Assembly (NCBI RefSeq): GCF_021869535.1
Contig: NW_026262668.1
Coordinates: 5,456,001-5,520,000, forward strand
DNA: 64,000 nucleotides
Source: Mytilus californianus
Taxonomy: Eukaryota
Direction: 5' to 3'
Program-made: the position numbers and the translations under genes
Shown: piece after piece, positions 9,040 through 30,289 of the stretch
How positions within the stretch are numbered: position 1 is the first letter of the stretch
Layout: every line of letters starts with the position of its first letter
The notes under the pieces: generated by a model
The model's input: only the letters and a program-made list of their open reading frames with translations
Databases searched by the model: none
What the model was told of the DNA's origin: nothing

Positions 9040-12000
9040 TGGTTAAGCATCATAAAGCGAAGCGTGGCTCAGGTGGAGAAGGAATATTTGTTAAAAGTAG
9101 TATCGAAGATCAATATAAAGTTACAATTTTAGATAATAGCGCCGAAGGCATTCTTTGGCTGAATTTCTACAACGAACAGGAAACGTTTTGTGTGTGCGTA
9201 TGTTATTTACCACCAACAGGCTCAAGCCGCTCGAATGACCCAGATTAGTTTTATGCGGATCTTGCTAATCAGATATATATGTATCAGAACATTGCACAGA
9301 TGTGTATAGTTGGTGATTTCAACTCAAGATCCTCAGACATTTCAGATTTCGTTGAAGGAGTTGATGATTTAACACCAAGAGAGGTGATTGATTATAATTC
9401 AAATTCCAACGGTGATTTATAAATAGATTTCCTAGTCGATTGTAATTTGCATGCTAAATGGAAGAAAAGGAAAACAAGATTTCACGTGTATATCAAAACG
9501 AGGTAAATCAGTTGAAGACTTCATAATAACAACCTATGAAAACATTCATATGTGCACTGATTTTGATGTTAAAATTATTTAATGATATTTCCAACGAATT
9601 AGAATTGCAAGACTCGAATCAAATACCTGACCATTCGGTACTTACTGTTCCATTCAAGAGAAAATCGACTCATAAACAAGACAAAACACAGCAAGCGTCT
9701 TACTCCAATATTATTCAAAAACTTCCATGTAAACCGAGATCTTGAAGCATACGAAACGAATTTTTAAGTGACGACGTGGTGCGAGTAATTTTAAAACATA
9801 GAAAATAATTTAACCGAGAAACAAGACGTCGATGCTGCGGTTGTTTTGTTGAACTTATTTCTGATGGAGTGAAATCCAAGATAGGTGAAAAATCAGAAGC
9901 AAATAACCAACACAGGAAGGCAAAAGAAAAATCAAGATACAAACCATACTGGAATGAGAATCTGAAAGTACTTTGGCATAAAACCTGCGAACACGAAAAA
10001 ATATGGCTGAAATGGAAAGGATGTGGTACGAAAAGAAACGTGTGCGAGAACAATTTCTTACATCGAGAAATACGTTCGATAAACTTTTTAGGAAAGAAAA
10101 ACGAAGTTATCAAATGCGCCAACAGGAAGAGCTAGTTAATCTTTCGACCAGAAACCAACACAAGAGACTTTTGGAAGAAAATTGGCAGATTAGGAATAGC
10201 TAATGACAGACGTTCTTCAATACCAATGGAAGTATTACCATCAGAAGGTAATGTGAGTGAAGATGTAAACACAGTATATAATACATGGAAACGAAAGTAT
10301 GAACATTTATTTCATGTAAGTGATTGTGAGTACAACGAAGATTTCTATGTATTGTCCAACAGCAACTAGAAAATGATATAACAGATAATTCGGTAAACGA
10401 ATCAGAAATTTTGAATAATGATATATATTAAGAACGATGACGTTAAGAAGGCAGTATACCGAGCAAAACTTAACAAAGCCGGTGGGCTCGACCAAATATG
10501 TGCCGAATTTCTTCGTAATAATTCATGTGTGAATATTCTATTCAAGATTATAAAATACGCATTTGAAAATGGAGTTGTTCCTGAGACATGGAATAATTTA
10601 CTCATTAATGACCCCATTAATCCAATATTAAAACCTGATAAAGACTATCGTGATCCTTAAGGTTATCGAGGGATAGCTCTGATGTCAATCCCCTGTAAGA
10701 TATATGCAGATATTCTTAACAGACGTTTATCAACCTGGTTAAAAGAAAATAATATCTTAGCTGATGAACAAAACGGCTTTAGAAAAGATCGTGGTTGCAT
10801 CGAACATTTGTACTCTCTAACAAGACTTGGATGGAGAGTTGTCTCATTGGCACTCATACCACATCTTCTTATATCTACTTATAACTAATAGAAAAATCGA
10901 AAGACGTTCAACGTTTGCATGTTTCATTGATACACAAAAGACTTTTGATTCTGTAAAAAGAGAGATGGTGTGGTTTAAACTGACGTCATTGTGCATAAAG
11001 GGAAAGTTTCTGAAAGGATTACAGTCACTGTATGTAGACGTAAGCTATGCTGTTATAGTAAACGGCTATATGACCGATATGTTTGACGTTAATATGGGTG
11101 TAAAAGAAGAGTGCAAAATATCCCCTACATTATTCTCAGTGTATGTTAACGATCTTGTCGATGAAATAAACAACATGAATCTTGTTATCCCGATCAATGA
11201 GTCGTACATTTTGTCCATCCTTTTATACGCTGATGACATTGTTTTACTAGCACCCGATGAAGAATCCCTTCAACTGATGTTAAATGTAGTCAACAATTGG
11301 TCTTCAAAGTGGAGATTGAGTGTAAATTTTGAAAAGAAAAATTTGTACATTTTCGTTGTCCGGCAATCCCTCGATCGAACTTTGACTTTCATTTTGGAGA
11401 CACAGCTATTGAATATTGCAGTAAATATCGACACTTGGGACTGTGGCTTGATGAACATCTAAATTGGAAATTTACAGTGAGGGAAATACGGAAATCGGCA
11501 AGTAGAGCACTCTCCGCTCTTTATACAAAGTTCATTTCATGTGGCAGTATGGACTATGACATATTTACAAAACTATATAAAAGTCTTGTTCAGCCTGTGT
11601 TATTATATGGAGCGAGTATTTGGGGCATATAAGAACACAAACAATTAGAAGCTGTTCAAAACAAAGCGTGCCGATACTACCTAGGAGCTTTCAAGAACTC
11701 TTCAAATCTAGCTATACGTGGAGACATGGGATGGTCTACAGTAAAGACTAAACAAAACGTTGAAGTTTTGAGACAGACTGTATTTTAAACTTGCTAATTT
11801 AGATGAAAATAGGCTAGTAAAACTGATACATGAATCGAGCAAATCAAAACAGCGCTCCTGGCACTCCCGCGTACTGGAATTCGTTCAAAAATGGGAACTT
11901 ACTTGTTTGATGAACGCTCAAAATATGACAACCCGACAAAAAGTTAGTATTTTAAAGGACAAGTTAAACAGTATGGATGCTGAAAATTGGTTAAGTGACG

Positions 12001-15651: not shown

Positions 15652-16453
15652 CCCTTTAGATATACTTCGTGTCGGGTGTACTGTCCTACCCTTTAGATAG
15701 ACTTCGTGTCGGGTGTACTGTCCTACCCTTTAGACTCCGTGTCGGGTGTACTGTCCTACCCTTTAGATAGACTTCGTGTCAGGTGTACTGTCCTACCCTT
15801 TAGATAGACGTCGTGTCGGGTGTACTGTCCTACCCTTTAGATAGACTTCGTGTCGGGTGTACTGTCCTACCCTTTAGATAGACTTCGTGTCGGGTGTACT
15901 GTCCTACCCTTTAGATAGACTTCGTGTCGGGTGTACTGTCCTACCCTTTAGATAGACTTCGTGTCGGGTGTACTGTCCTACCCTTTAGATAGACTTCGTG
16001 TCGGGTGTACTGTCCTACCCTTTAGGTAGACTTCGTGTCAGGTGTACTGTCCTACCCTTTAGATAGACTTCGTGTCGGGTGTACTGTCCTGCCCTTTAAA
16101 TAGACTTCGTGTCGGGTGTACTGTCCTACCCTTTAGATAGACTTCGTGTCGGGTGTACTGTCCTACCCTTTAGATAGACTTCGTGTCGGGTGTACTGTCC
16201 TATCCTTTAGATAGACTTCGTGTCGGGTGTACTGTCCTACCCTTTAGACTCCGTGTCGGGTGTACTGTCCTACCCTTTAGATAGACTTCGTGTCGGGTGT
16301 ACTGTCCTACCCTTTAGATAGACTTCGTGTCGGGTGTACTGTCCTACCCTTTAGATAGACTTCGTGTCGGGTGTACTGTCCTACCCTTTAGATAGACTTC
16401 GTGTCGGATGTACTGTCCTACCCTTTCGGTAGACTTCGTGTCGGGTGTACTGT
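15652..16453. repeat. 37-bp minisatellite, about 21-22 copies (ctttagatagacttcgtgtcgggtgtactgtcctacc)
   Basis: Near-identical head-to-tail units with no spacers; two 33-bp variant units. Confidence 0.95.
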
Positions 16454-16582
16454 TCTCGGGATTAAGATTTTGAATTTGTTTTCAGTTGATTTGGTACTCT
16501 CCCCTGTTATTATCTGTTGTAAGAGATTGAAGAAATAAAATTGTAACTACTCTACCTAAATTATCAATTTAACAAGCGTGAA

Positions 16583-16777
16583 GGGGCCTTCAGTGATCGA
16601 GTGGTCTACGTAGTGCATCTACTGTATCAGTTAGACTCCAATCTTAATTGACTAGAATTGTCTGTTTCCCTGACAAAGGTCGGTAGTTCCCACCGGCTTC
16701 CTCCTATAAAAACTTACCGCCCCGATATAGCCATTAGTGCTGAAAGTGGCGTTAAATACCAACAATTAATCCATCAA
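16583..16777 (+). mobile_element. tRNA-derived SINE (V-SINE/RUDI-like), internally deleted
   Basis: Starts ggggcctt with an A-box-like TGATCGAGTGG, followed by gactccaatcttaattgactag, ccggcttcctcc and the tail gaaagtggcgttaaatacc. Homologous to 19750-19915. Confidence 0.65.
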
Positions 16778-17629
16778 TTGGACAAGAAATAAAATTTAAT
16801 GAAAATAAAACAAATCACATATCAATTAATTATAAACCTAATACAATGTATAAAAGGTTAAAATGAAATTATCGATGTTAAAGATTAACATATCTCCTAT
16901 CTGCATGCAGTCTGCTTCAGAACTCAATCGTCTGCCCTGAAACGAAAGTGTGCTAATATTAAAGTGTCAGTTATTTGACTCAGAACATTATATTATGACT
17001 ATAACCATGACTTTCTCTCTAAATCACACGCAGATTGACCTACAGATGGCTTTAGGATTTTTTTGTGTCTTTTTTATTGCTGTTTTATTTCTTTTTATTC
17101 ATATTACCAAAATTGACTGCAATATTGCACATGTTATACAGTGATCTGTTTCATTCTATTATATATATAAATGTTACCCGTAGTAAATTCGTCGTAACTT
17201 TTGAATAAAAAAAAAAATCCCAAATATTCAAATGAAAGTCAATCATTTGCTATGGGAAACCTAAAAATATCCATCTGATAAAAAATAAAATTGGATTTGC
17301 AAAAATTCAAAAGTATACTTGAGAAATCAAGCGTTGAAAAGCTGATTAAAGACTGCAAATTACATCATTTATTATGCTTACAGATATAACATCGGAAACC
17401 CAAAAAAATAAGTTTGATAAACAAAAAATAAAAGTTAAATATGTACAATAATGTTAAACATGTTATACAAAGTACATTGCACGTCACATTGAAATCCACT
17501 CCGTTGTTTGCGACGAGTTTTTGGCTACATAACGCCTTCTTCCATTTGGCATGTTTGCAAATATGGGTAAGTACATGTTTGGGACAAAAGGTATATCAGA
17601 CCAAACATTAATCTAGAAGTGCACAATTA

Positions 17630-17770
17630 GAGGCAGATTTAGGGGGCAGCGGGCCTACCCTCCTTATGGAGCTACATAATTATATGGTTAATGCATAGAA
17701 TTTTGTCATTGTCTGCTCCTAAAGTTGCCTATTTGGGGCACCCTTTTTCAAACTCCTGGATCTGCATCAG
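17630..17770. mobile_element. MITE with gcagatttaggg / cctggatctgc termini
   Basis: Inverted termini of the same family as 5309-5456. Confidence 0.45.
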
Positions 17771-17974
17771 ACAATGCTTAACAGCTTTCTGAAAGCTTCA
17801 AGAAAATCCAGTCAGTAATTTAGAGTGAGTTACAAGGTTCATATTGCGGGAGGAGAAACGAACAAATGAGTCAAATGTTGAACTGACGGCGAGACGAACA
17901 GGCACAATGTCACTATACAGGCCTTTTTTTTTGTTTAGAGGGTTATATAATAAGATACAATGTTTGCCTCATTT

Positions 17975-18212
17975 GAGTATTGACTTTTTACAGAACTTTG
18001 AATTGTTCGCAATACCAAGGATTATCAATCCCAGGAATACATTACCTTAGCTGTATTTGGCGAAACCTTTCGGAATTTTGGGTCCCCCATGCTCTCCAAT
18101 TTCGTTCTTTATTTAGCCTTTAAACTTTTTTGATTCGAGCGTCAATGATGAGTCTTTTAGACGTAGCATGCGTCTGCCATACAAATATTTAAGCCTGGTA
18201 TCTTTGATGAGT
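17975..18212 (+). repeat. Decayed retrozyme/Penelope-associated repeat unit carrying a mutated type I hammerhead ribozyme
   Basis: gagcgtca-aTGATGAG-TCT-ttt-AGAC-GtAgC-atgcgtc-tgccat (18136-18180) keeps the hammerhead layout with core mutations. The flanking sequence resembles the mussel about 350-nt retrozyme repeat as I recall it. Confidence 0.6.
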
Positions 18213-18341
18213 TGCTTAGACAAAAAAAAACTGTTCTTCAAATCAGTATCATATGAATATTCAAGACATGGCAATTCACCATAGTTAATGTTTGATTTAA
18301 GATTTGTGACAAGAACTTTTGTCCTGGCCATGATAACTTAC

Positions 18342-18449
18342 TTGTCTTGAGATCATAGGCTCTACTAAAATATTTTGTTGGGATACAGCCATTTCTATCT
18401 CCAGGACTAAGTATCACTCCATTCTCAGACTTGTAAAATTTTATTCCAT
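18342..18449 (-). CDS. TRPT1: TRPT1-like coding exon 6 (DGIKFYKSENGVILSPGDRNGCIPTKYFSRAYDLKT)
   Basis: Acceptor tctttag and donor GTAAGT; 108 bp, phase 1 to 1. Matches the Tpt1 C-terminal F.S.NGVIL.PG...G.I...YF motif. Confidence 0.9.
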
Positions 18450-19001
18450 CTAAAGATTTGAAATAACATAAATTTTGGTAATATTTCAATTATTGTTATT
18501 GTTTTAAAGTACAAGTTGATAAAATGAAATCATTCCAAAACGTTTTATTACTTAACTTAAAACTTCTGAAGACTTAAAAAAAATAAAAACAGTTTTAATA
18601 ACTATTGAGAATTTGTGCTATCCCGCATTCAAAGACTGGCTATCAACTTTTCAATGTCATAATTGTATTAAGAAAGAATGACATCAATATATAGTCAAAG
18701 CATTCCAGACAGCGATTTGCTTGAACATAGCTTCAAAGAACTACACGGAAATGAATTCCACCGGCATACAGGATTTCCTACAACTTGTAAAAGGCACGTT
18801 TTGCATAAGGTCTTGATTTTATGGATTGTCGAAAGCGAGATCGTTTTTTTTTTTTTTTGGCCCGTTCCTTTTTCTTCAAATTTTATTTATCGTTGATGTG
18901 TTTTATATATTCATCTATTTTTAATTTGGAGCAAATATAAGGTTGTACAGAATAATATGTAATTCTCCAAGATAGTGTGAAACCAAATAAATTAAGCATA
19001 C

Positions 19002-19058
19002 CTCTCAGAGCTTTCCCGATGTCTATTTCAATGGCCATATCACACTTAACAGGCATAC
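19002..19058 (-). CDS. TRPT1: TRPT1-like coding exon 5 (GMPVKCDMAIEIDIGKALR)
   Basis: Acceptor ttttag and donor GTATGC; 57 bp, phase 1 to 1. Aligns to GMR..CEIAVFID...AL. Confidence 0.85.
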
Positions 19059-19247
19059 CTAAAATGGGCAAGCATTTTTCAAAAATAATTTAGATTAAGT
19101 AAAACGTATTCTCTAGAAATCATGAAAATTTTCTCTTAAATTCCTTGACTAGGACGGTGTACAAGAAAATGAAGATGGAAAGGTATATGAAAAATGAAAA
19201 TGGGATGGAGACATCAATATAAATTCAAGGCCCTTGAAAACAATATG

Positions 19248-19272
19248 GAGAGAGAGAGAGAGAGAGAGAGAG
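19248..19272. repeat. (AG)n microsatellite
   Basis: Read directly. Confidence 0.9.
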
Positions 19273-19584
19273 CGTGCCTTCAATAATAAAAATGACAAAC
19301 CCGTATTAGATTTATTTCCCAAGATGAACATTAAATGTGCTCGCGAATTGATAATCCCGTTCCATTACGACCGGAAATTATTCTGTTTCTAAGTTCTTTT
19401 ACATCTACATTTGATATACATTCACATTTGTGTGATTTTTTTTTATACCAAGGCAGATACAAAACAAAATATACAATTTGACTTTCCATCGTCTCTGACA
19501 GCTTGGTGAGGCAATTGATGCCGAATGAAAACACATTATAAGATCATTTCTAACGCGTTTCTACTTGAGTGCATTTAAAGTAAA

Positions 19585-19749
19585 AGAAAAGGCGGAAGAT
19601 ATCAAGAGGACGAAAAGACAAGTCCGCGAACCTCTACATAAAAAACTAAAGACTGAACAACAAGAATTCCACCAAAAACTGGGGTTGATCTGAGGTACTC
19701 CGGAAGGGTAAGCAGATCCTGATCAACAAGTGACACCCGTCAAGTCCAC
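19585..19749 (-). repeat. Third copy of the gaagggtaagcagatcctg dispersed repeat
   Basis: Homologous to 2172-2378 and 2575-2790. Confidence 0.55.
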
Positions 19750-19915
19750 GGAGAGAACCATGCACCGACCTTCGGAAGGAAAACTGACAATCCTAGTCAA
19801 TAAAGATTGGAGTCGAACGCACCTGCCACGTGCAGGACTCGTACTCACAACCTCAGTTGACAGGCTAGTGATACAGTAGTATGACTTCTTATACCAATTA
19901 ACCACCAAGGCCTCC
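19750..19915 (-). mobile_element. 5' half of the tRNA-derived SINE
   Basis: The reverse complement begins ggaggccttggtggttaattgg (A box), has a B-box-like gtacgagtcc, then gactccaatctttattgactagg as in 16583-16777. Confidence 0.65.
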
Positions 19916-20130
19916 TTAAGGGAATAGAGATCACGTACTTACCATAACGTATTCGATGTTCCTACATGATTGCAAATCGGAGTTAAAAGCTTGCACGCAT
20001 CCGATATTAAAAAAACATATTGAAGTAATTCATGTCTTCGCATGGCTTTACTTAAAAGTCACGCATCTTTCTTCCTTTTAAAGAAACAATTATTCTTGTG
20101 AACATTTCTCTCTCGTTTTAAAATACATAC

Positions 20131-20194
20131 CACTCATAGCACCATGTTCAGCGGGAGCGAAATGAATATGATCTCTGTTCATGCGACTTATACC
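20131..20194 (-). CDS. TRPT1: TRPT1-like coding exon 4 (GISRMNRDHIHFAPAEHGAMS)
   Basis: Acceptor attttacag and donor GTATGT; 64 bp, phase 0 to 1. Contains the catalytic R-x-H-I-H motif. Confidence 0.92.
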
Positions 20195-22011
20195 CTGTAA
20201 AATAATATGTATATAGAGAAAGTCTAACGATTATGAATAACAAAATTATCCAAAAGTGTAGGCGACATAATATGTGGACTAATTTGTTGCCAATCTAATT
20301 GAATTACAGACCCTGTGTCCACACTTCGATTCTAGGAGAAGCGTGTAAACAGAATCTGTATTTCAATATAAAGATTGATTATGTGTCTATCAACCGCCCA
20401 ACACATACGCACTAAAAAAGGGGTAAAGAAAGGAGAGAAAAAAAAAACGAGAAACTAAGAAATAAATACGACTTTTAAAGTGCCAGTCTTTGAAAGAATC
20501 AGGCAATTTTGAAGAACATCAAAACATGGCCGAAAAAAACCCACCGACCTAACCATCCTATTTTGAAGTTACCCTCATCCTGAGTTAGAAATGGTAGGTC
20601 TTTCTTTTCTGCGTGTCTGGTAATTCGAGAAATATCTAGTATGTTCCACCGACTATACCCCATAGAAATCTAATGGACTACATATGGGACTACTGCAACA
20701 ACCATTAATTATTTTGCGGTAAAAATCTAAGTACGTGGTAAATAAATTAAACGGAAACCTTAAAAAAAACAAAAACAAATAAAACAATCCTCCTTCCAAA
20801 AAAACAACCCTCGAACACAAACCAAAACCATTAAGATATATACGACTCCAGACAACCAATGACGAGGTCCCGCACTTGGTACAGTCACATGACCATCCTT
20901 AACTAGATATTTGAGTAAATCAGTGGAATAAAAACATACATACAATGTATGTACAATAGAAATCAGTACTATATAGATGATACGCGGGTATAGCACATGT
21001 GCAAAAATAAGGCTTGCACTTAATATCAGCAGTTGTACTTCGTAGTAGATTTATAGTTACCTGAACAGTATGAAAAGTCACGATATTGTAAAATGAAAAG
21101 TAAGTTTGTGTGAAGAGGTTCCCTAGTACCCTGTTATACGTAGTACATCTATAGTAGTAAATGAGCACACATGCATCTAACAATTACAAGTTTACCTTCA
21201 GCTGCGTGCTACTATATGTTTTTCTTTTATTTGTCTTTTATTGTGTTTACTATCCTTCCAACATTTTGGACCGTGCACCCTTCTCGTTGTTCAGAGTGCA
21301 TAGTGCATGGATGTACCCAAATAAACTAATATTCATGCTTGTCTACTTGATTGTAAGTTGTAGTATATATTATAAAACTGATATCTGGCACACGTAAGTA
21401 CACTTTACTTTATAAGTGTCATTTCCTGAAATTATTTATAAATGACAACAAATCAACAAGCAGGCGAAAGAATGAGGAGAGATGAGATCGTTATTCAATA
21501 AAATAACACAAAAGAAGAGTGCATCATGGGATGGCTTGCTGTCTCACACTCCCTCGGACAGTCCAGTACATCTTCTAGTGAGTGAATTTACATACTATTG
21601 TATTACAGCAACATTAATTCTCTATCTCAGTAAATGTATATAAAGGTCACTTCAAGTTAATTCAAGCTCATAGTCATCACATAGTATAACGCGACATTTT
21701 GCTACAATCGATGGTTTCAACTGGAATTCAATCTACTCGATAATGTGGTGTGAGCTTTTGCTCCCTGATGAAGGCGTCACCGAGACTTTGAGATTAAGAA
21801 TTGCAATAAAAGCGCAGTTCTTTGACTAGGATTTTGCCAAGTGCACGAAGGGTGTTTGTGTTATAAATTACTACATCACATCGGTACCTTCTTTTCCGTA
21901 ACTGATAGACGTAGCACTTCACATGCCTCTATTAAATGTCAGAACAAATGGCGTAGATTTCTGCAAAGCAATGGTATCATAGTTGATCAATCTTAACTCC
22001 CAAATACTCAC

Positions 22012-22110
22012 AGTTTGCCGAATACTGTCAAAATTTCGTCGCCTGGTTCCATGAAGAACGACCCTTGCTTGACTAGAATGAGTAATTGGCTCTAACTCTG
22101 GATCAGAAAG
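22012..22110 (-). CDS. TRPT1: TRPT1-like coding exon 3 (LSDPELEPITHSSQARVVLHGTRRRNFDSIRQT)
   Basis: Acceptor tttttctcgcag and donor GTGAGT; 99 bp, phase 0 to 0. Contains the HGT motif. Confidence 0.92.
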
Positions 22111-22867
22111 CTGCGAGAAAAAAATTGAAATTTTGGCAATTTTTAGTATTTACAAAAAAAAATCGGGGACGGTTCCACGGAACAATGTGTCACCGCTCGC
22201 CTGCGATTACTGCCGTCAGTGTAAAAGCGTAATGTTGACTGCCAAAAACTAAGTCCTTTTATCAGGCCATTTATAAAATAGGGAAGAATAAAAGAAAAAT
22301 TTGAACTTTTTCATCAGTTACTAGTTCTTGATCATGTCATGAAGAAGCTTCTGTCCATGTTTCAGGACATTCCATGAACATAGTTATTGATGACAAAAAT
22401 GAACCCCATGCATGCAGACACTGTAAATGTTAACTGCAAGAAAACTAATTCCATCTGTCAGCAAAATACGAAAAACAAAGTTGTTTTCAAAATTTTGCCT
22501 GAAATAATTTAATAGCTTCACGACACGTTTCATAAAACTATTTGATGGTTTGATAAACTCATTGATATCTAAACTAGAGGCTCTAAAGAGTCTGTGTCGC
22601 TCACCTACATATTCAACACTGACCACTTTTTAGTAATCAAAGAGCTGAAAGTTCTGAGGAAAAATGACGCCATTGTCTCTAATATTGGGATATTTTTGAT
22701 GCAAGTCTTGATTTTCACATAATTTACCTACTGAATCCCCTTAAGAGACTTTTCAGTTCATGGTAGGTATGCTGACTGACAATAGAATAGAAATGAATTG
22801 TTTTCAATGTCTATGACTTTTTTATTTGTTTGTCAAGATATATGTATATATGTGTGAAGTGAATATA

Positions 22868-23232
22868 AAGAAGAAGATGTGGTCTGATTGCCAATGAGAC
22901 AACTCTCCACAAGAGACCAAATGACACAGAAATTAACAACTAAAGGTCACCGTAAGGCCTTCAACAATGAGCAAAGCCCATACCGCATAGTCAGCTATAA
23001 AAGGCCCCGAAATGACAAATGTAAAACAATTCAAATGAGAAAACTAACGGCCTAATTTACGTACAAAAAAATGAACGAAAAACAAATATGTAACACATCA
23101 ACAAACGACAACCACTGAATTACAGGCTCCTGACTTGGGACAGACATGCACATACATGCAGAATGTGGTGGGGTTAAACATGTTAGCGGGATCCCAACCC
23201 TTCCCTTACCTGGGACAGTGGTGTAACATGAC
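22868..23232 (-). mobile_element. 3' UTR fragment of the Penelope-like element
   Basis: Reverse complement of about 15120-15475 at high identity. Confidence 0.85.
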
Positions 23233-26200
23233 AATATTTATATACTGGTTGTTTCTTTTGTATACAGAAATAGCTCAAGACTACCTGAGCGATCTACAAT
23301 ATTCAAAGTAATATGTGAATTTGTTTCTTGCAATTTCATTATTCTTAGTCAAGGATACATTATCAGACTATCCCCTTCTTTATAGAATTATTTAACAAAA
23401 TGATGACAAAGAGCCTGCAGTAAGCAAGCTCTTATACCCCACATAGTCCTTATTTAAGAGATAAGTTACAAGTGACCTAGTGACATTGTTATTTCTGTTA
23501 CTTAAAGGATGATCAAATTCAGTAGATTTAGACAATAGTATTGTTATACTAGTTTTACAATTACAAATATAGTGACACCATTTATACAACAAAATTTCAT
23601 TGTTGATATGTATATATATATAAACAGAAATCTTTAAATGACAACATAAATTATTGCAGAACTATCTTTTTTTTCAAATGATTTAATGTTTGTATGTCAT
23701 TTATTTCAAATAATTCTGATAACTAGCTAGCTATCCACCAGAGTCTAAATAATGTGGCTGTTGGCAGTTATAAGTCACTTTACATCATTATAGCCTCATA
23801 TTTTTTAAGGACCTATCTAGACCTTTTTCTTAGGCAAGGTGTTTTATATCACTCTGAAAGCAATACAATCCAGTGTTCTCCCCAGGATTTTTTATAGCGC
23901 TGTGGTATTAGTGCCCGATTTAGGATTGATTCACCTTAAGTTTCATTTTGTGACTTGATGCTACATTTATTTATAACTACCATGTTAGTTTTATTTTATT
24001 GAATAGACAAAGACCTGGATTTTTTATACATCTGCCATGTGCATTAACTGAAATGCAAACAAGTGACATTTCAAATATTAGTTAAACTTTAAAAATTAAA
24101 ATGCCTAGATAACTTAAATAATTTGATTGTATTACCACCCGTCCCCCAATGTAGCACAGTAGGTATATCTTTTTTTCTCACTTTCAGTTGTTTGACTTAT
24201 AAACTAGTTATATATCCTTTACAACTTCATAATTTACTTATACACATATTTAAGAAGGTTTACAATGACAAAATTGGAATTTCTTCATTAATTTTCATTT
24301 ACATTTATCAAATTACAATTTTGCAATTAAAAATGGTATATCCTTAAATATCAAAGGAAGAAATGGAATACTCTTTCCATAAGTACTGAAATGTTATTAA
24401 AGGCATGTTTAAAATAGGCTAACACATTTGATCATATTCCAAGATAAATATGAACAGGCGATTATTTCAACTAGGAATTATTTTCAATTATGGAATTTGC
24501 ATAATTTCTTGTGCTTGAAATTTTTAATAAATTCCATGTTTATTCTGTATTTTAATGTTCTGTGCAGTGCTGCGAAAAGTGGATGGCAAATCTCAATACT
24601 TTTTATTTATTTTCAAGAAATTTTCGTATCCGATTTAAAAAAAAGTAAAATATGGGCTTGTAATAAACACCTGGACAACGGGAATGCTTTTCTCAAAACA
24701 ATACAGGTTCAATAGTTTAGTTGTTAACTCGAAAAAGTAATGAAATAATCGTAATGTTTCAAAAATGGACTAGACCACGTTGTCAGAGAAAGGGTGAAAC
24801 TTTCCTTAAATACTTTTGATATGATTCATTAAGCACTGCCTACTCCTTTCATAAAGATTCTGCATCTTATAATTCTTTTTAAAGTGAAGAAATCCAGAAA
24901 GAAATAAAGTCTTTTTGACAGAAAAACTTCTACAATTATCGCCATTGTATTCTTTAATGGAACTGGCCCCTGCGATATTTGACCTATATTATGTCTGCAG
25001 CAGTAACTTACAAATACATACGCACCGCGTGGATATAACCGTATTACTAATTTTCGCCGATGATTCTTAAAAACTCCTTAAATCTTGATAAAGACCATTA
25101 TCTTTCGTATGATTTCAAGATGATTCCGATTATTATTTTTTGAATGATTTCAAAGTTCAGCTGACAAGAAAGGTAAACATTCTTTCAAAAACTATTTTCT
25201 AGCGATAGCGATTTGTTATCATTGGTATGTAAAAAGTCCAAAACCATAACAATACGGATCTATTTATATTCTGATTTTTTTTACGGATGGAAAGTCATGC
25301 ACAAAAAAGCGAAAGCTTATATAAATATGAAAAATATACCAACGGGATAGCTCAAAATACCATTTAATAACAATAAACATATTGACAGGTTAAGAATGAA
25401 ATTCTGTACAGGACATAGTTATGTAAAATACGGAACCGAGTTCGGAAGGCGGCTTGGAAGCGACCGGAAGCGATAAAATGAAATCTGGTCAACGGTATAG
25501 TAAAATTGACGCTTTGACAGCGTCATTTTCCAAAAATCATCATGCATTGTAGGGGAATACCTCTATTAAGAACTAACTGACTATTTCAGTCACGTTGATG
25601 TATTTATAGATCTTATCATTTTAAATTTTTTTAAATTCTATCCATCTACTATTGTTTTCAAGATAATAGTCAAAAATGCAAAAATTGGGGAAAATAGTCA
25701 TACAAGGACAATAACTAAGGAATCGACTAGTTGACTTGACTTATCAGTAGATCTTGTCTTGTCGGTCATTTTTGTTATTAAAGTTTCTGTCTATCTTTTA
25801 TAAATTTCGAGATAATAGGCAAAAATGAAAGGGAAAAAATGGCAAAATTCGTCGAATAAGGGCAGAATCTCCTGTAAGAAGTCATCTGACAGTTTTGATG
25901 CCGATTGTCATTAGAAATATCATTCTGAACATTTTTTTCCCTGTCAGATTTTCTCGATCTATTGCGGTATTTAAAATAATAGACAATTGCATTTACCTCT
26001 ATGTTCTATTCTTAGCCATGTCTGCCATGTAATGGGAAAAGCTCACACGTGCCCTTCGGGCCAGGTAAGATAAATTGTAACCCAGTCTGTATCTAAATGT
26101 TAACTCCAGAACAATCGAAGTTCATTTATCAGTAAGAGAAAAACAGAATCATATAAAAATCTGCATTTTTCTACAGATAATATCACTTGATCATGCATTC

Positions 26201-26252
26201 AAAGTACGGAAAAAATGAAAAAAAAATATTTAAAAAATTTTGCTCTGGATAC

Positions 26253-26615
26253 CACAGGCGCTTGGGTATATGATACAAATATTTTTTGGGGATTTTTTTG
26301 TTGTTGATTAAAATATTCAATTTATATATTTATACTACATATCTATCACTACTACGCATGTCTCACCTAGTTTCGAGTGATTTTACCAACTCTTGAGACA
26401 ACCCCCATTTTTACTATCCACACTAAGAAACAAATGTCTTAGTGTGGATAGTAAAAATGGGAGTTGTCTCAAGAGTTGGTAAAATCACTCGAAACTAAGT
26501 GAGACATGCGCAGTAGTGATAGATATGAAGTATGAATATAGAAAATTGAATATTTTAATAAACAACAAAAAAAATCCAAAAAAAAATATTTGTATCATAT
26601 ACCCAAGCGCCTGGA
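26253..26615. mobile_element. About 360-bp foldback MITE with an 8-bp target-site duplication (hAT-like)
   Basis: Arms 26255-26428 and 26437-26613 are near-perfect inverted repeats. CTGGATAC flanks both sides (26245-52, 26616-23). Confidence 0.85.
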
Positions 26616-26707
26616 CTGGATACTGTCAAGAAAAAGCTTCTGTTGCAAGTTTCGTAAGACTCCAAAGAGATTTGACTAAGTAATTGGTGTTGAAATAAAC
26701 TGTTTTC

Positions 26708-27205
26708 ACAGAGATATGTCTCGCCTTTTTGTTATTTTGATTATGTAAATGTTGAAATTAAAATAGCAATACTTTAACATGTAAGTTATGCAAATATTCA
26801 AAGATAATGAACCATGACTGAAGGTACATGGCTAAACAATCTCCATGGAAATGAGATGTGCCAATGCTAATACAACTGCATACAAAATACCATTGACTTA
26901 TTATAAGTTGTTCCCTTTAAACAAACCTAAACACAAATATTAACTTGTAAACTTGTAAACTATGTAAAAGTTTCAAAGTCAATGCAATGAACCATGATGT
27001 CAGAGGGGGTGGGGCTATATAATCCTCATGGAAACAATACTTGCAAATGCCATTAAATTTGCATAATAAATATCATTGACTTAACATTAGCAGTTTCATT
27101 ATAACTGATCTAATCACAAACTATTACATTGTTGACGCCGCCGCCGACGCCGGAAACAGCATACCTATGTCTCGCTTTTTGATTCCGTCAAGGCGAGACA
27201 AAAAA
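26708..27205 (+). mobile_element. HINE/DINE-like non-autonomous Helentron
   Basis: Has the subTIR atgtctcgc at both ends, a gacgccgccgccgacgcc microsatellite, tandem internal repeats of about 170 bp and the 3' hairpin gtctcgc...gcgagac. Confidence 0.6.
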
Positions 27206-27617
27206 CCTCACTGAACCTAAATTGACGATGCCGACTACGCAATGCAGAATCGATATGTCTCGCTTCCGCGACTTTTGTCGCAAAAAATAGGATCTGAGGA
27301 TGATATTCTTAACCAAAACCATAATTCTATAGGAAGTAAAACAATTGATTTTCTTTCACATAAAGAGAATAATACAGTATTTGTTACGAACGTTTTTATA
27401 AGAACATGCAACATTTTCAATAGTGTATTAAAATTGTGATCCTAGAAAATTGTAGCACTGAATAACATTGTGTTTTGTTGCTGTCTTATTAACGTATATA
27501 ACCCACTTCTCCGTTAAATTTTGTCTTTAAAATACCATGCACAATTGAAGGCATATAAAGTATTGTAAAATGCTCTCTCTGAAAATCAAAAAATATCTCC
27601 AACAGATAAAAGCTTGC

Positions 27618-27781
27618 CCGAATACTATGTCCTTGTGTTGCTCTGACTTGAAGTTGTCCTCCGTTTGTTCGTTTGGCAAACCTCCCTTTATTATCCCTAT
27701 CTACTATTCTTTCTATGTCATCCTCGTCAAAACCATTGAAGTATGAGAGTTCAAGTATGTCATCAACATTTGCATATCCTT
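27618..27781 (-). CDS. TRPT1: TRPT1-like coding exon 2 (EGYANVDDIL...KGRF...VRATQGHSIR)
   Basis: Acceptor ttcattgcag; 164 bp, phase 1 to 0. Contains K-x-R-F and RAxQGHS. The donor reads GCAAGC, a non-canonical GC donor. Confidence 0.9.
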
Positions 27782-28534
27782 CTGCAATGAAATTAATTAA
27801 ACGAAAAATACAGAACCAGGCCCGATAATCCCATTCATGCAAATGATGCACAATATATAGTATTTGCAATTGACAATTATTTGTAATATTTCAAAAGCAC
27901 AATGCACATTATCACCTTGTATGTAAGAATGTTTGATTTGTCTTCAAATAATCTTATTGGATCTACCGCTGATCTGTTCTCTCTACGGCGGTGGTGGTTT
28001 AGGACACAAGTGCGAGACGAGATTTAAAAAAAATATATATGTATATACTGAAAATTGAAAATTATTCATATATATATACATGTATATATATATTTAAATC
28101 GTCTCGCACCTGTGGTTATGTGATGTGTTTGCTATTTCCAATGTAATGCATGCTCTAGAGTGTCGCATTTCTCTCAGTTTCAGCACATTTTATTTTCAAA
28201 ATACACGATGTCGTGAACAAGGTTGCGAATGTAGTCAGAGGTTTCGGACTTGAATAGGGCTTAATTTCTTGATCAAACAGTATCGCAAACATCCATTCTT
28301 CAAGAATTAAACAGGGCCATTTTTTTTAGTAAAACAAATGCATCTTTTCTTATTAGATTGGCATCTTTTGAATCTATAATAAGCTACACAAACATTTTGC
28401 TGTTGTTCATAGTCCCATCACCAGTAACGTTATCGTAAAGGTAAGGGAATATAAGTACAAACAAAGTATATTCTAATAAAACTTAATGTCCAGTGGCGTA
28501 GCACCAGTGTAGCATTAGTTGTAAATATAAAAAT

Positions 28535-28797
28535 AAGAATGTGGTATGATTGCCAATGAGACAACTCTCCACAAGAGACCAAATGACACAGAAATTAACA
28601 ACTATAGGTCACCATACGACCTTCAACAATGAGCAAAACCCTTACTGCATAGTCAGCTATAAATAAAAGGCCCCGAAATGAAAATGTAAAACAAGTCAAA
28701 CCAGAAAACTAACGGCCTAATTTATGTACAAATTAATGAACGAAAAACAAATATATTATACACAGTAACAAACGACAACCACGGAATTACAGCATGT
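28535..28797 (-). mobile_element. 3' UTR fragment of the Penelope-like element nested in a CAGTGGCG...CGCCACTG MITE (28491-29066)
   Basis: Reverse complement of about 15220-15475. The flanks carry inverted cagtggcg / cgccactg. Confidence 0.75.
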
Positions 28798-29936
28798 GCT
28801 TACAAATAATTTTATAAAACTTTTTTTTTTCAATAAGAATTTTACTATAATCGTTCAGCTTCTTGGGGTGGGCACGCCCCTCAGACCCCTTGCTTTAATT
28901 GGTATGTGTATTGATGGTGTACACAATTTTTTCTCTCATAACGTTTTCTTACCCGGCTGACCTATATATGGTTGATTATATAGGGAATTACTGAGGCATG
29001 ATTGGAGCCTGCCCCTCTTAGGTATTCAATGCCCCCCTTTTTATGAAAATTTCTGGATCCGCCACTGCTGGATCCGTATCTGGTATTTTTATTTTGTACA
29101 TGTATCTGTTTTGCTGGATGTTTTGAAAACTGCATTTTTTTTTTTAACTTAAACACACACAAGCTTTGCAATGTTTAGAAGCTTAACTTATGCATGTTAT
29201 GTACAAGGTTTAAAAAAAACGCCGATCAGAACCTTGGCATCAGCTGACAGATATACAGCTAACAAAGATAAATAATATTCAAGGAGGTAGTTAAATTCAA
29301 ATTCAAATATTTTATTATACCAATCATGGTCCCACAAGGGGCATTTGCAATTAACAATTATAATTAGATATGACAATATAAGCGACAAACATGAGTCATG
29401 ATCAGTCATTGTACAGCATATAATCATAATGATAATGTGACAGCTAGACATAAGACATAAGACATAAAGCTTTATTTAGAGTCGGTATGTGCAAATACAA
29501 GTATAAACATAAGCCCTGAAGAGCTTTTAAAACCGACAGAGCAACAAATAAAACAAAACATACATATCAAGTCATGCACATATAAATTAAACATATAAAG
29601 CAAGAGCTCATATCAGTATATAAACATGCAGCACAAAAGTTCTTAAAAGCATCTTACAAGTTAAACACACACTGAAACATGCACTTGTGAGATAAAAGCA
29701 CAAAAGCAAAAATAAAATGGTTTGCACATCAGCTATTACAATTGACATGTATATCTTGAATATTTGTTTTCCTTTTATTATTTCAATGTCAGCAATGCAC
29801 CTCGTGTTTACATGTAGTAATCGACTCTTGAAAGGATAAAAAAAAAGCTACTAAATGCTGTCCTAAGGGAGATAACCAAAACGACAAACGTTGCTAGGAA
29901 TTTAACTGTTCTTCAAATAAAATGACTATAACTCAC

Positions 29937-30012
29937 CCTTCGTGAGGTGCAACCCTCTGGCATCATGTCTTAACAATTTGACGAGAGCTTTAGACAACTG
30001 CACATTAGCCAT
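29937..30012 (-). CDS. TRPT1: TRPT1-like coding exon 1 (MANVQLSKALVKLLRHDARGLHLTK)
   Basis: ATG at 30012-30010 and donor GTGAGT; 76 bp, phase 1. The LSK.L...LRH motif is diagnostic of Tpt1. Confidence 0.9.
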
Positions 30013-30289
30013 ACCGTAAGATCTAATCACATTGTGTTCGTGAATTATCTCTAGTTTCGTTTTTCCAAAGAAATACTCTCACTAAAATCGAATGAAAATT
30101 AACGTATAATATCTCCAAGATTAAAATTTTCCAAACTTGATATTATTACGAAAAGAAACCGAAATTAGGTAGAACAGCGAAACGGTTTGGGCAATGTCCC
30201 TTTGAATTGGTAGTTAACGGAAAATGACACTTCAAACAAAACGAAAATGAAAGTAAAACTGAAAACGAGTCTTAAGACATTTTACTCAT

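What the first reader, a model, noticed from the sequence alone, without database searches (positions are those of the whole stretch)
18342..30012. Hidden six-exon TRPT1/Tpt1-like gene with an intact catalytic tetrad but altered substrate-binding motifs
Six exons with consistent phases (76+164+99+64+57+108 nt) give MANVQLSKALVKLLRHDARGLHLTKEGYANVDDILELSYFNGFDEDDIERIVDRDNKGRFAKRTNGGQLQVRATQGHSIRLSDPELEPITHSSQARVVLHGTRRRNFDSIRQTGISRMNRDHIHFAPAEHGAMSGMPVKCDMAIEIDIGKALRDGIKFYKSENGVILSPGDRNGCIPTKYFSRAYDLKT. R15, H16, R59, R120, HGT and NGV are retained. However, the usual LS-Y/W-x-LRH serine is Val11, the eukaryotic SGMR arginine is Pro137, the loop before SG is shortened, and HGT is followed by a basic RRR. 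Animals ligate tRNA with RtcB, so TRPT1's physiological substrate is unresolved, and Tpt1 enzymes also ADP-ribosylate RNA/DNA ends. This may be a neofunctionalised paralog with shifted specificity, such as a nucleic-acid ADP-ribosyltransferase. The gene structure is seen; the altered function is inference.
Basis: partly seen in the sequence, partly recalled or inferred. Interest (0 to 1): 0.72.

Follow-up and report, generated by a model that had tools for sequence, protein, structure and literature searches.

The report
Old divergent TRPT1 paralogue in mussels
This mussel gene is a real, expressed second copy of the RNA-end-modifying enzyme TRPT1. Molluscs have kept it for hundreds of millions of years with one NAD-gripping arginine replaced, next to a normal copy, so the pair could help show what TRPT1 does in animals.

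Summary
The exons, phases and peptide are real. Adding one missed 20-nt terminal exon (16936-16917) gives a 195-aa CDS identical to RefSeq XP_052092775.1 (Mytilus californianus 'tRNA 2'-phosphotransferase 1-like'), so the gene is annotated, not hidden.

RNA-seq junction reads, a cross-species cDNA, dN/dS of 0.20 and an AlphaFold model (TM 0.91 to human TRPT1) show an expressed, constrained Tpt1-fold gene. The catalytic tetrad, HGT, Ser-Gly and N-x-V are intact. The 'SGR'-motif arginine is Pro in 20/20 bivalve sequences (oyster, chiton and cuttlefish too) against Arg in 138/141 other homologues. The donor loop is three codons shorter (exon 4: 64 vs 73 nt).

My length-limited searches first suggested a sole, drifted ortholog. 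An exhaustive profile search overturned that. Bivalves and the chiton also carry a long gene (690-1016 aa) with a fully canonical SGMR domain and the same intron positions, joined to an Egalitarian/EXD1-like exonuclease fold.

A changed activity (weaker NAD+ clamp, bias towards stable ADP-ribosylation) is plausible from published mutant data but untested. The long copy was seen in M. edulis, not checked in M. californianus.

The parts
29937..30242 (-). Exon 1: 5'UTR (30242-30013, minimum extent) plus the first 76 nt of CDS (30012-29937). Encodes S7, K8, V11, K12 and catalytic R15 and H16. Donor GTGAGT.
   Evidence: The cDNA contig L001 from another Mytilus run aligns 30242-29937 as one block.
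27618..27781 (-). Exon 2 (164 nt, phase 1 in, phase 0 out). Encodes K57, R59 and A-T74-QGHS. Followed by a GC donor (GCAAGC).
   Evidence: Pfam PF01885 at 46.2 bits for this exon alone. 62 loose-end reads at 22111 carry the end of exon 2 joined to exon 3. cDNA block 27782-27618.
22012..22110 (-). Exon 3 (99 nt). Encodes H100-G101-T102 followed by R103-R104-R105, and I110.
   Evidence: 34 junction reads for 20194|22012 in X7, plus contigs of X1 and X2.
20131..20194 (-). Exon 4 (64 nt). Encodes catalytic R120, HIH, the shortened donor loop and S134. It is 9 nt shorter than the 73-nt exon of canonical TRPT1 genes.
   Evidence: 26 junction reads for 19058|20131.
19002..19058 (-). Exon 5 (57 nt). 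Completes G135, then M136 and P137 (codon CCT at 19053-19051, the position of human Arg170), and C140.
   Evidence: 25 junction reads for 18449|19002. Pro in 20/20 bivalve sequences and the chiton against Arg in 138/141 others.
18342..18449 (-). Exon 6 (108 nt). Encodes N163-G-V165 and the C-terminal strand. Ends in phase 1 at a GTAAGT donor.
   Evidence: An X1 contig joins 16936|18342. 17 X7 reads run on into a divergent exon 7 allele.
16815..16936 (-). 17 nt of CDS plus the TGA stop (16936-16917), then 3'UTR reaching at least 16815.
   Evidence: CDS identical to P0009. (X1 and X2 contigs cover 16815-16935). (cDNA block 16939-16864).

Best explanation
SHOWN.
- This is the Mytilus californianus copy of an old molluscan paralogue of TRPT1: a short 'TRPT1-like' form of about 195-200 aa.
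- It arose by DNA-level duplication of the six core TRPT1 exons. Intron positions and phases are the same as in canonical genes.
- The tree dates the split before the bivalve radiation. A chiton carries both forms, which puts it before bivalves and chitons parted. A cuttlefish sequence sits in the short clade.
- In the species checked it sits beside an unlinked long gene with a fully canonical Tpt1 domain.
- It is transcribed, correctly spliced and under purifying selection.
- It folds like human TRPT1 and keeps every residue known to be needed for chemistry: the R15-H16-R59-R120 tetrad, K57, HGT, I110, S134-G135 and N163/V165.
- It differs in a fixed suite of changes. The 'SGR' arginine that clamps the NAD+ diphosphate is Pro137. 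The donor loop is 3 residues shorter. HGT is followed by Arg/Lys instead of Tyr/Phe. ANQGHS is ATQGHS. The RNA-lobe helix reads L-[A/V]-[K/R] instead of L-S-[W/Y].

INFERRED.
- It is still an NAD+-dependent transferase acting on phosphate ends of RNA or DNA.
- Its NAD+ site can no longer close the Arg-Arg arch. I therefore expect weaker NAD+ binding and a slower second (transesterification) step.
- That would bias it towards leaving a stable ADP-ribose on the nucleic acid rather than simply removing a 2'-phosphate.
- The long canonical paralogue would keep the ancestral job.
For: Identity and structure:
- The CDS equals XP_052092775.1.
- PF01885 hits are collinear across the exons.
- AlphaFold2 pLDDT is 90.2, with TM 0.91 and 0.90 to human and mouse TRPT1, 7yw3 and 7yw2.

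Expression and constraint:
- Junction reads and one read orientation over the exons.
- The cDNA L001 aligns exon for exon.
- dN/dS is 0.20 against L001. Against more distant mytilids dS is saturated and dN is about 0.2.

Paralogy:
- Long canonical-domain genes exist in M. edulis (XP_071160697.1), Mizuhopecten, Ostrea, Pinctada, Dreissena, Sinanodonta and Liolophura.
- Four species have both forms.
- The long clade has 95/84 support and the short clade 99/97.
- Within a species the two forms are 43-45% identical.

DNA-level duplication:
- Exon lengths are 76|164|99|64|57|108 here, against 88|173|99|73|57|108 in the M. edulis long gene and 91|170|99|73|57|108 in Lingula.
- Phases are 1,0,0,1,1,1 throughout.

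Signature:
- Pro in 20/20 bivalve sequences plus chiton, oyster and cuttlefish, against Arg in 138/141 others.

Role of the arginine:
- It hydrogen-bonds the NAD+ diphosphate and belongs to the 'SGR' motif (PMC10415124).
- It forms the arch over ADP-ribose. RslTpt1 R137A is barely viable in yeast, is inactive at 0.1 mM NAD+ and accumulates the 2'-P-ADPR-RNA intermediate (PMC6333775).
Against: - No biochemical data exist for any SGxP enzyme.
- The lost Arg could be compensated by the Arg/Lys fixed at HGT+1, or by K139 in mytilids.
- The long paralogue was seen in M. edulis but not verified in M. californianus.
- Deep nodes of the tree are unresolved, so the age of the duplication beyond the bivalve-chiton split is uncertain.
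- Similar states in Ciona (SGMS) and the annelid Dimorphilus (SGIP) could mean the suite can also arise in a fast-evolving sole ortholog.
Confidence: 0.6

Rival explanations
1. Same chemistry, different deployment. The short gene is a duplicate whose catalysis is equivalent to canonical TRPT1, with the lost Arg compensated by Arg/Lys at HGT+1 or other changes. The two copies differ only in partners, localisation or expression. The long form carries a disordered R/G/N/Q-rich head and an exonuclease-fold tail, and the short form is a free minimal enzyme.
For: - All catalytic and most NAD+-contact residues are invariant.
- HGT+1 is Arg/Lys in 20/20 bivalve sequences.
- The long form has gained extra regions that the short one lacks.
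- Patella (SGMK) and a Candida (SGIK) show the position tolerates change.
Against: - The chiton has Ser, not a basic residue, at HGT+1 yet also has Pro.
- A bird has HGT-RRR together with SGIR, so the two positions are not obligately coupled.
- Lys keeps the charge and Pro does not.
- The bacterial R137A mutant is strongly defective.
- There is only one origin of the suite, so covariation cannot be tested statistically.
Confidence: 0.27
2. Sole, fast-drifting ortholog. The gene is simply the bivalve TRPT1, with clade-specific substitutions and no canonical partner. This was my own reading up.
For: - Length-limited searches found no canonical bivalve TRPT1 among 54 and 120 listed hits.
- Each Mytilus proteome gave one short gene.
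Against: - Those searches only see proteins of 0.55-1.75 times the query length.
- The exhaustive profile search found long canonical-domain genes in seven mollusc genera, four of which also have the short gene.
- The two forms make separate clades.
Confidence: 0.05
3. Pseudoenzyme or decaying copy. Loss of the NAD+-clamping Arg and loop shortening abolished catalysis, and the protein now only binds nucleic acid or NAD-derived ligands, or is on its way to loss.
For: - The Arg is important in the one enzyme where it was mutated.
- The short clade evolves faster than the long one: Mytilus-Sinanodonta identity is 45% against 61%.
Against: - The tetrad, HGT, SG and NxV are invariant across all 19 short sequences since before the bivalve radiation.
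- dN/dS is 0.20.
- The frame is intact and the gene is expressed.
- A dead enzyme would not be expected to keep the catalytic His/Arg residues.
Confidence: 0.08

Closest known systems
Human and mouse TRPT1 (PDB 7YW3, 7YW2; Yang et al. 2023, PMC10415124)
   Same: Two-lobe fold (TM 0.90-0.91, 37-40% identity). Also shared: the R-H-R-R tetrad, the Ser-Lys RNA-binding pair, K57, HGT, the Ser-Gly of the donor loop and N-x-V.
   Different: Arg170 (human) / Arg165 (mouse) of the SGR motif is Pro137. The donor loop is 3 residues shorter. Phe/Tyr after HGT is Arg. ANQGHS is ATQGHS. Ser-Tyr on the first helix is Val-Lys. There is no N-terminal extension.
Long canonical TRPT1 of bivalves and chiton (e.g. 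XP_071160697.1 M. edulis, XP_021379973.1 Mizuhopecten)
   Same: The same six core exons and intron phases. The same family domain. Present in the same genomes.
   Different: 43-45% identity. The long form keeps every canonical motif, including SGMR and the 73-nt exon 4. It has a low-complexity N-terminal region and a C-terminal Egalitarian/EXD1-like DEDD exonuclease fold. It lies on a different chromosome or scaffold. It evolves more slowly.
Runella slithyformis Tpt1 R137A and Clostridium thermocellum Tpt1 Arg139 (Banerjee et al. 2019, PMC6333775)
   Same: This is the same structural position as Pro137: the arginine that, with the catalytic Arg, arches over the NAD+ diphosphate.
   Different: That is a laboratory alanine mutant of a bacterial enzyme. 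It is defective, sensitive to NAD+ concentration, and accumulates the ADP-ribosylated RNA intermediate. Here the loss is natural, fixed for hundreds of millions of years, and accompanied by other changes.
Ciona intestinalis TRPT1 (XP_009862003) and Dimorphilus gyrociliatus TRPT1
   Same: A similar suite: Ciona has L-V-R on the first helix, ATQGHS, a shortened loop and SGMS; Dimorphilus has L-V-S on the helix, ACQGHT, a short loop and SGIP.
   Different: They are a tunicate and an annelid. They group with the mollusc short clade only weakly (81-94 bootstrap, long branches). Whether they have a canonical partner is unknown.

Membership tests
Tpt1/KptA/TRPT1 family (Pfam PF01885) | Profile match above the Pfam gathering score | tested here: met
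   Exon 2 alone scores 46.2 bits against a cut-off of 26. The other exons hit the profile collinearly. P0009 carries a precomputed PF01885 hit.
Tpt1/KptA/TRPT1 family (Pfam PF01885) | Arg-His-Arg-Arg catalytic tetrad | tested here: met
   R15, H16, R59 and R120 are present. They are invariant in 61- and 19-sequence alignments. Mapping to Sc R23/H24/R71/R138 and Hs R40/H41/R86/R150 follows PMC10415124.
Tpt1/KptA/TRPT1 family (Pfam PF01885) | NAD+ contacts: HGT motif, adenine-stacking Ile, N-x-V | tested here: met
   H100-G101-T102, I110 and N163/V165 are all kept.
Tpt1/KptA/TRPT1 family (Pfam PF01885) | Two-lobe fold (winged-helix RNA lobe plus ADP-ribosyltransferase-like NAD+ lobe) | tested here: met
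   AlphaFold2 pLDDT 90.2. Foldseek TM 0.91 to 7yw3 and 0.90 to 7yw2. Archaeal and bacterial Tpt1 structures follow in the ranking.
Tpt1/KptA/TRPT1 family (Pfam PF01885) | NAD+-dependent 2'-phosphotransferase or 5'-phosphate ADP-ribosyltransferase activity | not testable with these tools
   Needs recombinant protein and assays.
Canonical eukaryotic TRPT1 (as defined by the 'SGR' donor-loop motif, Yang et al. 2023) | Ser-Gly-X-Arg in the donor loop | tested here: not met
   The sequence is S134-G135-M136-P137. Pro occurs in 20/20 bivalve sequences and the chiton, against Arg in 138/141 others. Among the best 150 representatives the count is R 139, P 6, K 2, S 2, H 1.
Canonical eukaryotic TRPT1 (as defined by the 'SGR' donor-loop motif, Yang et al. 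2023) | Falls in the same clade as the lineage's canonical TRPT1 (orthology) | tested here: not met
   The short SGxP clade (99/97) is separate from the long canonical bivalve and chiton clade (95/84). Both occur in the same species.
Canonical eukaryotic TRPT1 (as defined by the 'SGR' donor-loop motif, Yang et al. 2023) | Shared intron positions and phases with animal TRPT1 genes (common descent at the DNA level) | tested here: met
   Phases are 1,0,0,1,1,1, and exons 99|..|57|108 are identical in Mytilus, scallop, chiton, Lingula, Elysia and the long genes.

The most novel reading that the evidence does not exclude
The short SGxP enzymes are a distinct molluscan class of TRPT1-derived nucleic-acid ADP-ribosyltransferases. 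The long paralogue, with its exonuclease fold, would keep the 2'-phosphate removal. The pair would then be a natural separation of TRPT1's two activities. It might tie into the expanded PARP, macrodomain and NADAR ADP-ribose systems that earlier notes report in this genome.
Probability: 0.2. Interest if true: 0.75.

Novelty: new variant of a known kind. Interest (0 to 1): 0.5.

Why it matters
What TRPT1 does in animals is unsettled. Animals join tRNA exons with RtcB, which leaves no 2'-phosphate. Yet TRPT1 is widely kept, and in vitro and in cells it ADP-ribosylates RNA and DNA ends (PMC9458441, PMC10415124).

Molluscs turn out to carry two anciently separated versions:
- One is canonical and joined to an RNA-binding-type exonuclease fold.
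- One is minimal, with the NAD+-clamping arginine of the 'conserved SGR motif' replaced by proline while every catalytic residue is kept.

That is a ready-made comparison for asking which activity needs the arginine clamp and which cellular role each activity serves. It also shows that the SGR motif is not universal in eukaryotic TRPT1-family enzymes. Full-text searches found no paper that mentions TRPT1 together with bivalves or Mytilus.

Tried and rejected
1. 'Sole drifted ortholog.' I held this until, based on two word-index searches. It was an artefact of their 0.55-1.75x length window. The exhaustive profile search reversed it.

2. Retrocopy or transposon origin of the short gene. I rejected it because all six intron positions and phases match canonical TRPT1 genes.

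3. Pseudogene. Rejected by the intact frame, expression and dN/dS of 0.20.

4. Mytilus-specific novelty. Rejected, because the suite is fixed in all bivalves sampled.

5. Covariation between Pro137 and Arg/Lys103. Not testable. The trait has essentially one origin, and the chiton and a bird break the pairing.

6. AU tests on mollusc relationships were weak. All molluscs as one clade was not rejected (p 0.17). Bivalves plus gastropods without the chiton gave p 0.035. The groups were named after seeing the tree.

7. Distance measurements in the model (does R103 reach the diphosphate site?) were not possible. No coordinates are exposed.

The look-up of earlier findings by sequence was blank, which means nothing.

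9. The spliced protein was never typed. It was used through its stored identical copy P0009.

Full report
**What is in the sequence.**

- 30012-29937
- 27781-27618
- 22110-22012
- 20194-20131
- 19058-19002
- 18449-18342

Their lengths are 76, 164, 99, 64, 57 and 108 nt, and the phases are consistent. Five of the introns have GT-AG ends. Intron 2 has a GC donor (GCAAGC).

Exon 6 ends in phase 1 at a GTAAGT donor, so it cannot be the last exon. A seventh exon at 16936-16917 (17 nt plus TGA) completes the frame.

The seven-exon CDS encodes 195 aa. It is identical, residue for residue, to P0009 = XP_052092775.1, 'tRNA 2'-phosphotransferase 1-like [Mytilus californianus]'. The gene lies at 5,462,917-5,496,012 of JAKFGE010000002.1 in GCA_021869535.1. 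So the window is M. californianus, and the gene is already annotated.

Each exon piece matches Pfam PF01885 in collinear order. A tblastn of the protein against the window finds only this one gene.

**Expression and constraint.**

A stranded RNA-seq run of the same species label (X7) was laid on 16600-22300.
- It gives 25 junction reads for intron 5, 26 for intron 4 and 34 for intron 3.
- 62 reads carry the end of exon 2 (...GGACATAGTATTCG-G) directly onto exon 3. This confirms the GC-AG intron.
- 17 reads run from exon 6 into an allele of exon 7 that reads RETIEF-stop.
- A contig of run X1 joins 16936|18342 exactly.

Exon depth is 11-33 in about 6% of the run. Introns are empty except at repeats. 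Reads over the exons are of one orientation only (first mate on +), which in most stranded libraries means minus-strand RNA, as the gene model requires.

A 901-nt cDNA contig from another Mytilus run (L001) aligns to the window in seven blocks at exactly these exon edges. It extends exon 1 to 30242.

dN/dS between the window CDS and L001 is 0.20 (dN 0.025, dS 0.126). Against more distant mytilids dS is saturated while dN is about 0.2.

An AlphaFold2 model (pLDDT 90.2) superposes on human and mouse TRPT1 with TM 0.91 and 0.90.

**The residue claims.**

These are kept:
- R15, H16, R59 and R120
- K57 and S7-K8
- H100-G101-T102
- I110
- S134-G135
- N163 and V165

. By the mapping in PMC10415124, these are the catalytic tetrad, the RNA-binding pair and lysine, and the adenosine, distal-ribose and nicotinamide contacts.

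These are changed:
- V11-K12, where others have Ser and Trp/Tyr.
- T74, where others have ANQGHS.
- R103 after HGT, where others have Tyr, Asn or Phe.
- A donor loop 3 residues shorter.
- P137, where human TRPT1 has Arg170.

Over 162 homologues, the Arg170 position is Pro in 20/20 bivalve sequences and the chiton. It is Arg in 138 of 141 others, with two Lys and one gap.

The literature gives this arginine a clear role:
- It hydrogen-bonds the NAD+ diphosphate.
- It is the R of the 'SGR' motif, described as highly conserved among eukaryotic TRPT1.
- In C. thermocellum Tpt1 it forms, with the catalytic Arg, an arch over the ADP-ribose diphosphate.
- The R137A mutant of Runella Tpt1 is barely viable in yeast, loses activity at 0.1 mM NAD+ and accumulates the ADP-ribosylated RNA intermediate.

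Ala at the 'serine' position occurs in 24 of 141 other homologues. HGT-RRR also occurs in a bird TRPT1 that keeps SGIR.

**Ortholog or paralogue: a reversal.**

Word-index searches with the mussel protein and with a gastropod TRPT1 gave a one-sided picture.
- The SGxP form appeared in mytilids, scallops, Mactra, Mya, unionids and a chiton.
- The canonical form appeared in about 17 gastropods, Lingula, annelids and many other phyla.
- No canonical bivalve protein appeared.

A first tree put bivalves plus the chiton on one long stem (100/98). I therefore read the gene as the sole, drifted ortholog.

Those searches only see proteins of 0.55-1.75 times the query length. An exhaustive profile search with the 19 short sequences (A2; 8512 hits) listed many long proteins with one Tpt1 domain. 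Naming them showed bivalve and chiton genes of 690-1016 aa:

| Species | Accession / locus | Length |
|---|---|---|
| M. edulis | XP_071160697.1 | 895 aa |
| Mizuhopecten | XP_021379973.1 | 738 aa |
| Ostrea edulis | LOC125649502 | 678-738 aa (3 isoforms) |
| Pinctada | – | 687 aa |
| Dreissena | LOC127871281 | 731 aa |
| Sinanodonta | – | 1016 aa |
| Liolophura (chiton) | LOC135468616 | 946-965 aa (3 isoforms) |

Transcript contigs of 3.5 kb were also found. The domains of these proteins are fully canonical: LSKxLSF-LRH, ANQGHS, HGTY, the full-length loop and SGMR.

M. edulis, Mizuhopecten, Sinanodonta and Liolophura each have both forms. The two genes lie on different chromosomes or scaffolds.

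In a joint tree the long forms make one clade (95/84) and the short forms another (99/97). The deeper nodes are unresolved.

The long form evolves more slowly:

| Comparison | Long form | Short form |
|---|---|---|
| Mytilus-Mizuhopecten | 65% | 58% |
| Mytilus-Sinanodonta | 61% | 45% |
| Mytilus to Lingula | 56% | 45% |

**How the copy arose.**

I mapped exons of five short or canonical genes and two long genes by exact spliced matching. Core exon lengths are:

| Gene | Exon lengths (nt) |
|---|---|
| Mytilus short | 76, 164, 99, 64, 57, 108 |
| Chiton short | 85, 164, 96, 70, 57, 108 |
| Scallop short | 79, 167, 99, 64, 57, 108 |
| Lingula | 91, 170, 99, 73, 57, 108 |
| Elysia | 76, 173, 99, 73, 57, then a merged last exon |
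| M. edulis long | 88, 173, 99, 73, 57, 108 |
| Scallop long | 88, 170, 99, 73, 57, 108 |

Phases are 1,0,0,1,1,1 in all. The short gene is therefore a DNA-level duplicate of the core exons, not a retrocopy or a transposon capture. The donor-loop deletion is the 73-to-64-nt change in exon 4 (70 nt in the chiton).

The short gene overlaps a RasGEF-PH gene head-to-head in both mussel and scallop. This supports orthology of the short genes among bivalves.

**How far the short form reaches.**

Among the best 150 representatives, the non-Arg variants are these:
- the oyster Magallana gigas (SGFP);
- the cuttlefish Acanthosepion (SGIP);
- the annelid Dimorphilus (SGIP);
- Ciona (SGMS);
- three unnamed metagenome proteins, among them SGMP and SGMH.

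The cuttlefish falls with the bivalves (99/92). Ciona and Dimorphilus join only weakly and on long branches.

No gastropod short form was seen. The duplication therefore predates the bivalve-chiton split, and probably the cephalopod split too, with loss in gastropods. It may be older, or the suite may recur.

**What it most likely does.**

Shown: this is an expressed, constrained Tpt1-fold protein with all catalytic residues.

Inferred:
- It still transfers ADP-ribose from NAD+ to a nucleic-acid phosphate.
- Without the arginine arch, and with a shorter donor loop, the NAD+ site should bind more weakly and stay open.
- By analogy with R137A, the second step should lag, so the ADP-ribosylated product should persist.
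- The canonical long paralogue is free to keep the ancestral role.

The main rival is that Arg/Lys at HGT+1 compensates and the two copies differ only in context.

**Verdict.**

The functional shift remains a hypothesis.

I found no paper that mentions TRPT1 together with bivalves or Mytilus. I rate it as a new variant of a known kind, of moderate interest.

Noticed in passing
L010:1001-14856 (M. edulis) and L009:1001-30347 (Mizuhopecten); not in the window: The long canonical TRPT1 of bivalves and the chiton has a low-complexity R/G/N/Q-rich N-terminal exon. It also has a K-rich linker and a conserved C-terminal block of about 200 aa. That block folds (pLDDT about 90) as a DEDD 3'-5' exonuclease domain, most like Egalitarian and EXD1 (Foldseek E 6e-9). 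Pfam sees only a faint PF01612 hint. In Mytilus the first acidic motif reads H-V-E, so the domain may be inactive. A TRPT1-exonuclease-fold fusion seems undescribed.
   Followed up: partly
window 21482-21643 (+) and onwards beyond 40000: A RasGEF + PH gene (642 aa product) on the plus strand has its first coding exon (ATG at 21482) inside intron 2 of the TRPT1-like gene. The two genes therefore overlap head-to-head and antisense. Opposite-strand RNA reads at 21375-21756 fit this exon. The same neighbour overlaps the scallop short gene (L007).
   Followed up: partly
P0221 reads Tpt1, aspartyl protease, RT, RNase H. P0192 has an aspartyl protease upstream of a Tpt1 domain that is 88% identical to the M. 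edulis long gene, so it may be a fused gene model.
   Followed up: partly
P0197 (Ciona intestinalis), P0241 (Dimorphilus gyrociliatus): A tunicate and a miniaturised annelid show a similar suite of TRPT1 changes. Ciona has L-V-R on the helix, ATQGHS, a short loop and SGMS. Dimorphilus has L-V-S on the helix, ACQGHT, a short loop and SGIP. This is either scattered retention of an old paralogue or a recurring coupled shift.
   Followed up: partly
window 5732-7381 (+): A single-exon 549-aa ORF with a B-box zinc finger and an NHL/SGL-like beta-propeller region (TRIM-like). It is annotated as a gene in the assembly.
   Followed up: partly
window 10827-11462 (+): A 211-aa ORF with a reverse-transcriptase domain (RVT_1, E 1e-18). 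It is a retroelement fragment downstream of the gene.
   Followed up: no
window 22859-23097 and 28521-28762; 26282-26583; 16027-16530: Two copies (83-90% alike) of one repeat lie in introns 2 and 1. A 147-nt-arm hairpin (85% complementary, 8-nt loop) lies in intron 2 and looks like a MITE. A 37-nt-period tandem array lies just 3' of the gene. Very high-copy repeats sit at 17937-18318, 19656-19846 and 20420-20610, judged by contig depth.
   Followed up: no
window 18367, 18415, 22018-22082 and exon 7: Allelic diversity is high in the RNA-seq individual. It includes the amino-acid changes F107I, T90I, R72K and Q191E, and a TAA stop in place of TGA. Two further exon 7 alleles appear in other runs (RDTIEF).
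   Followed up: partly
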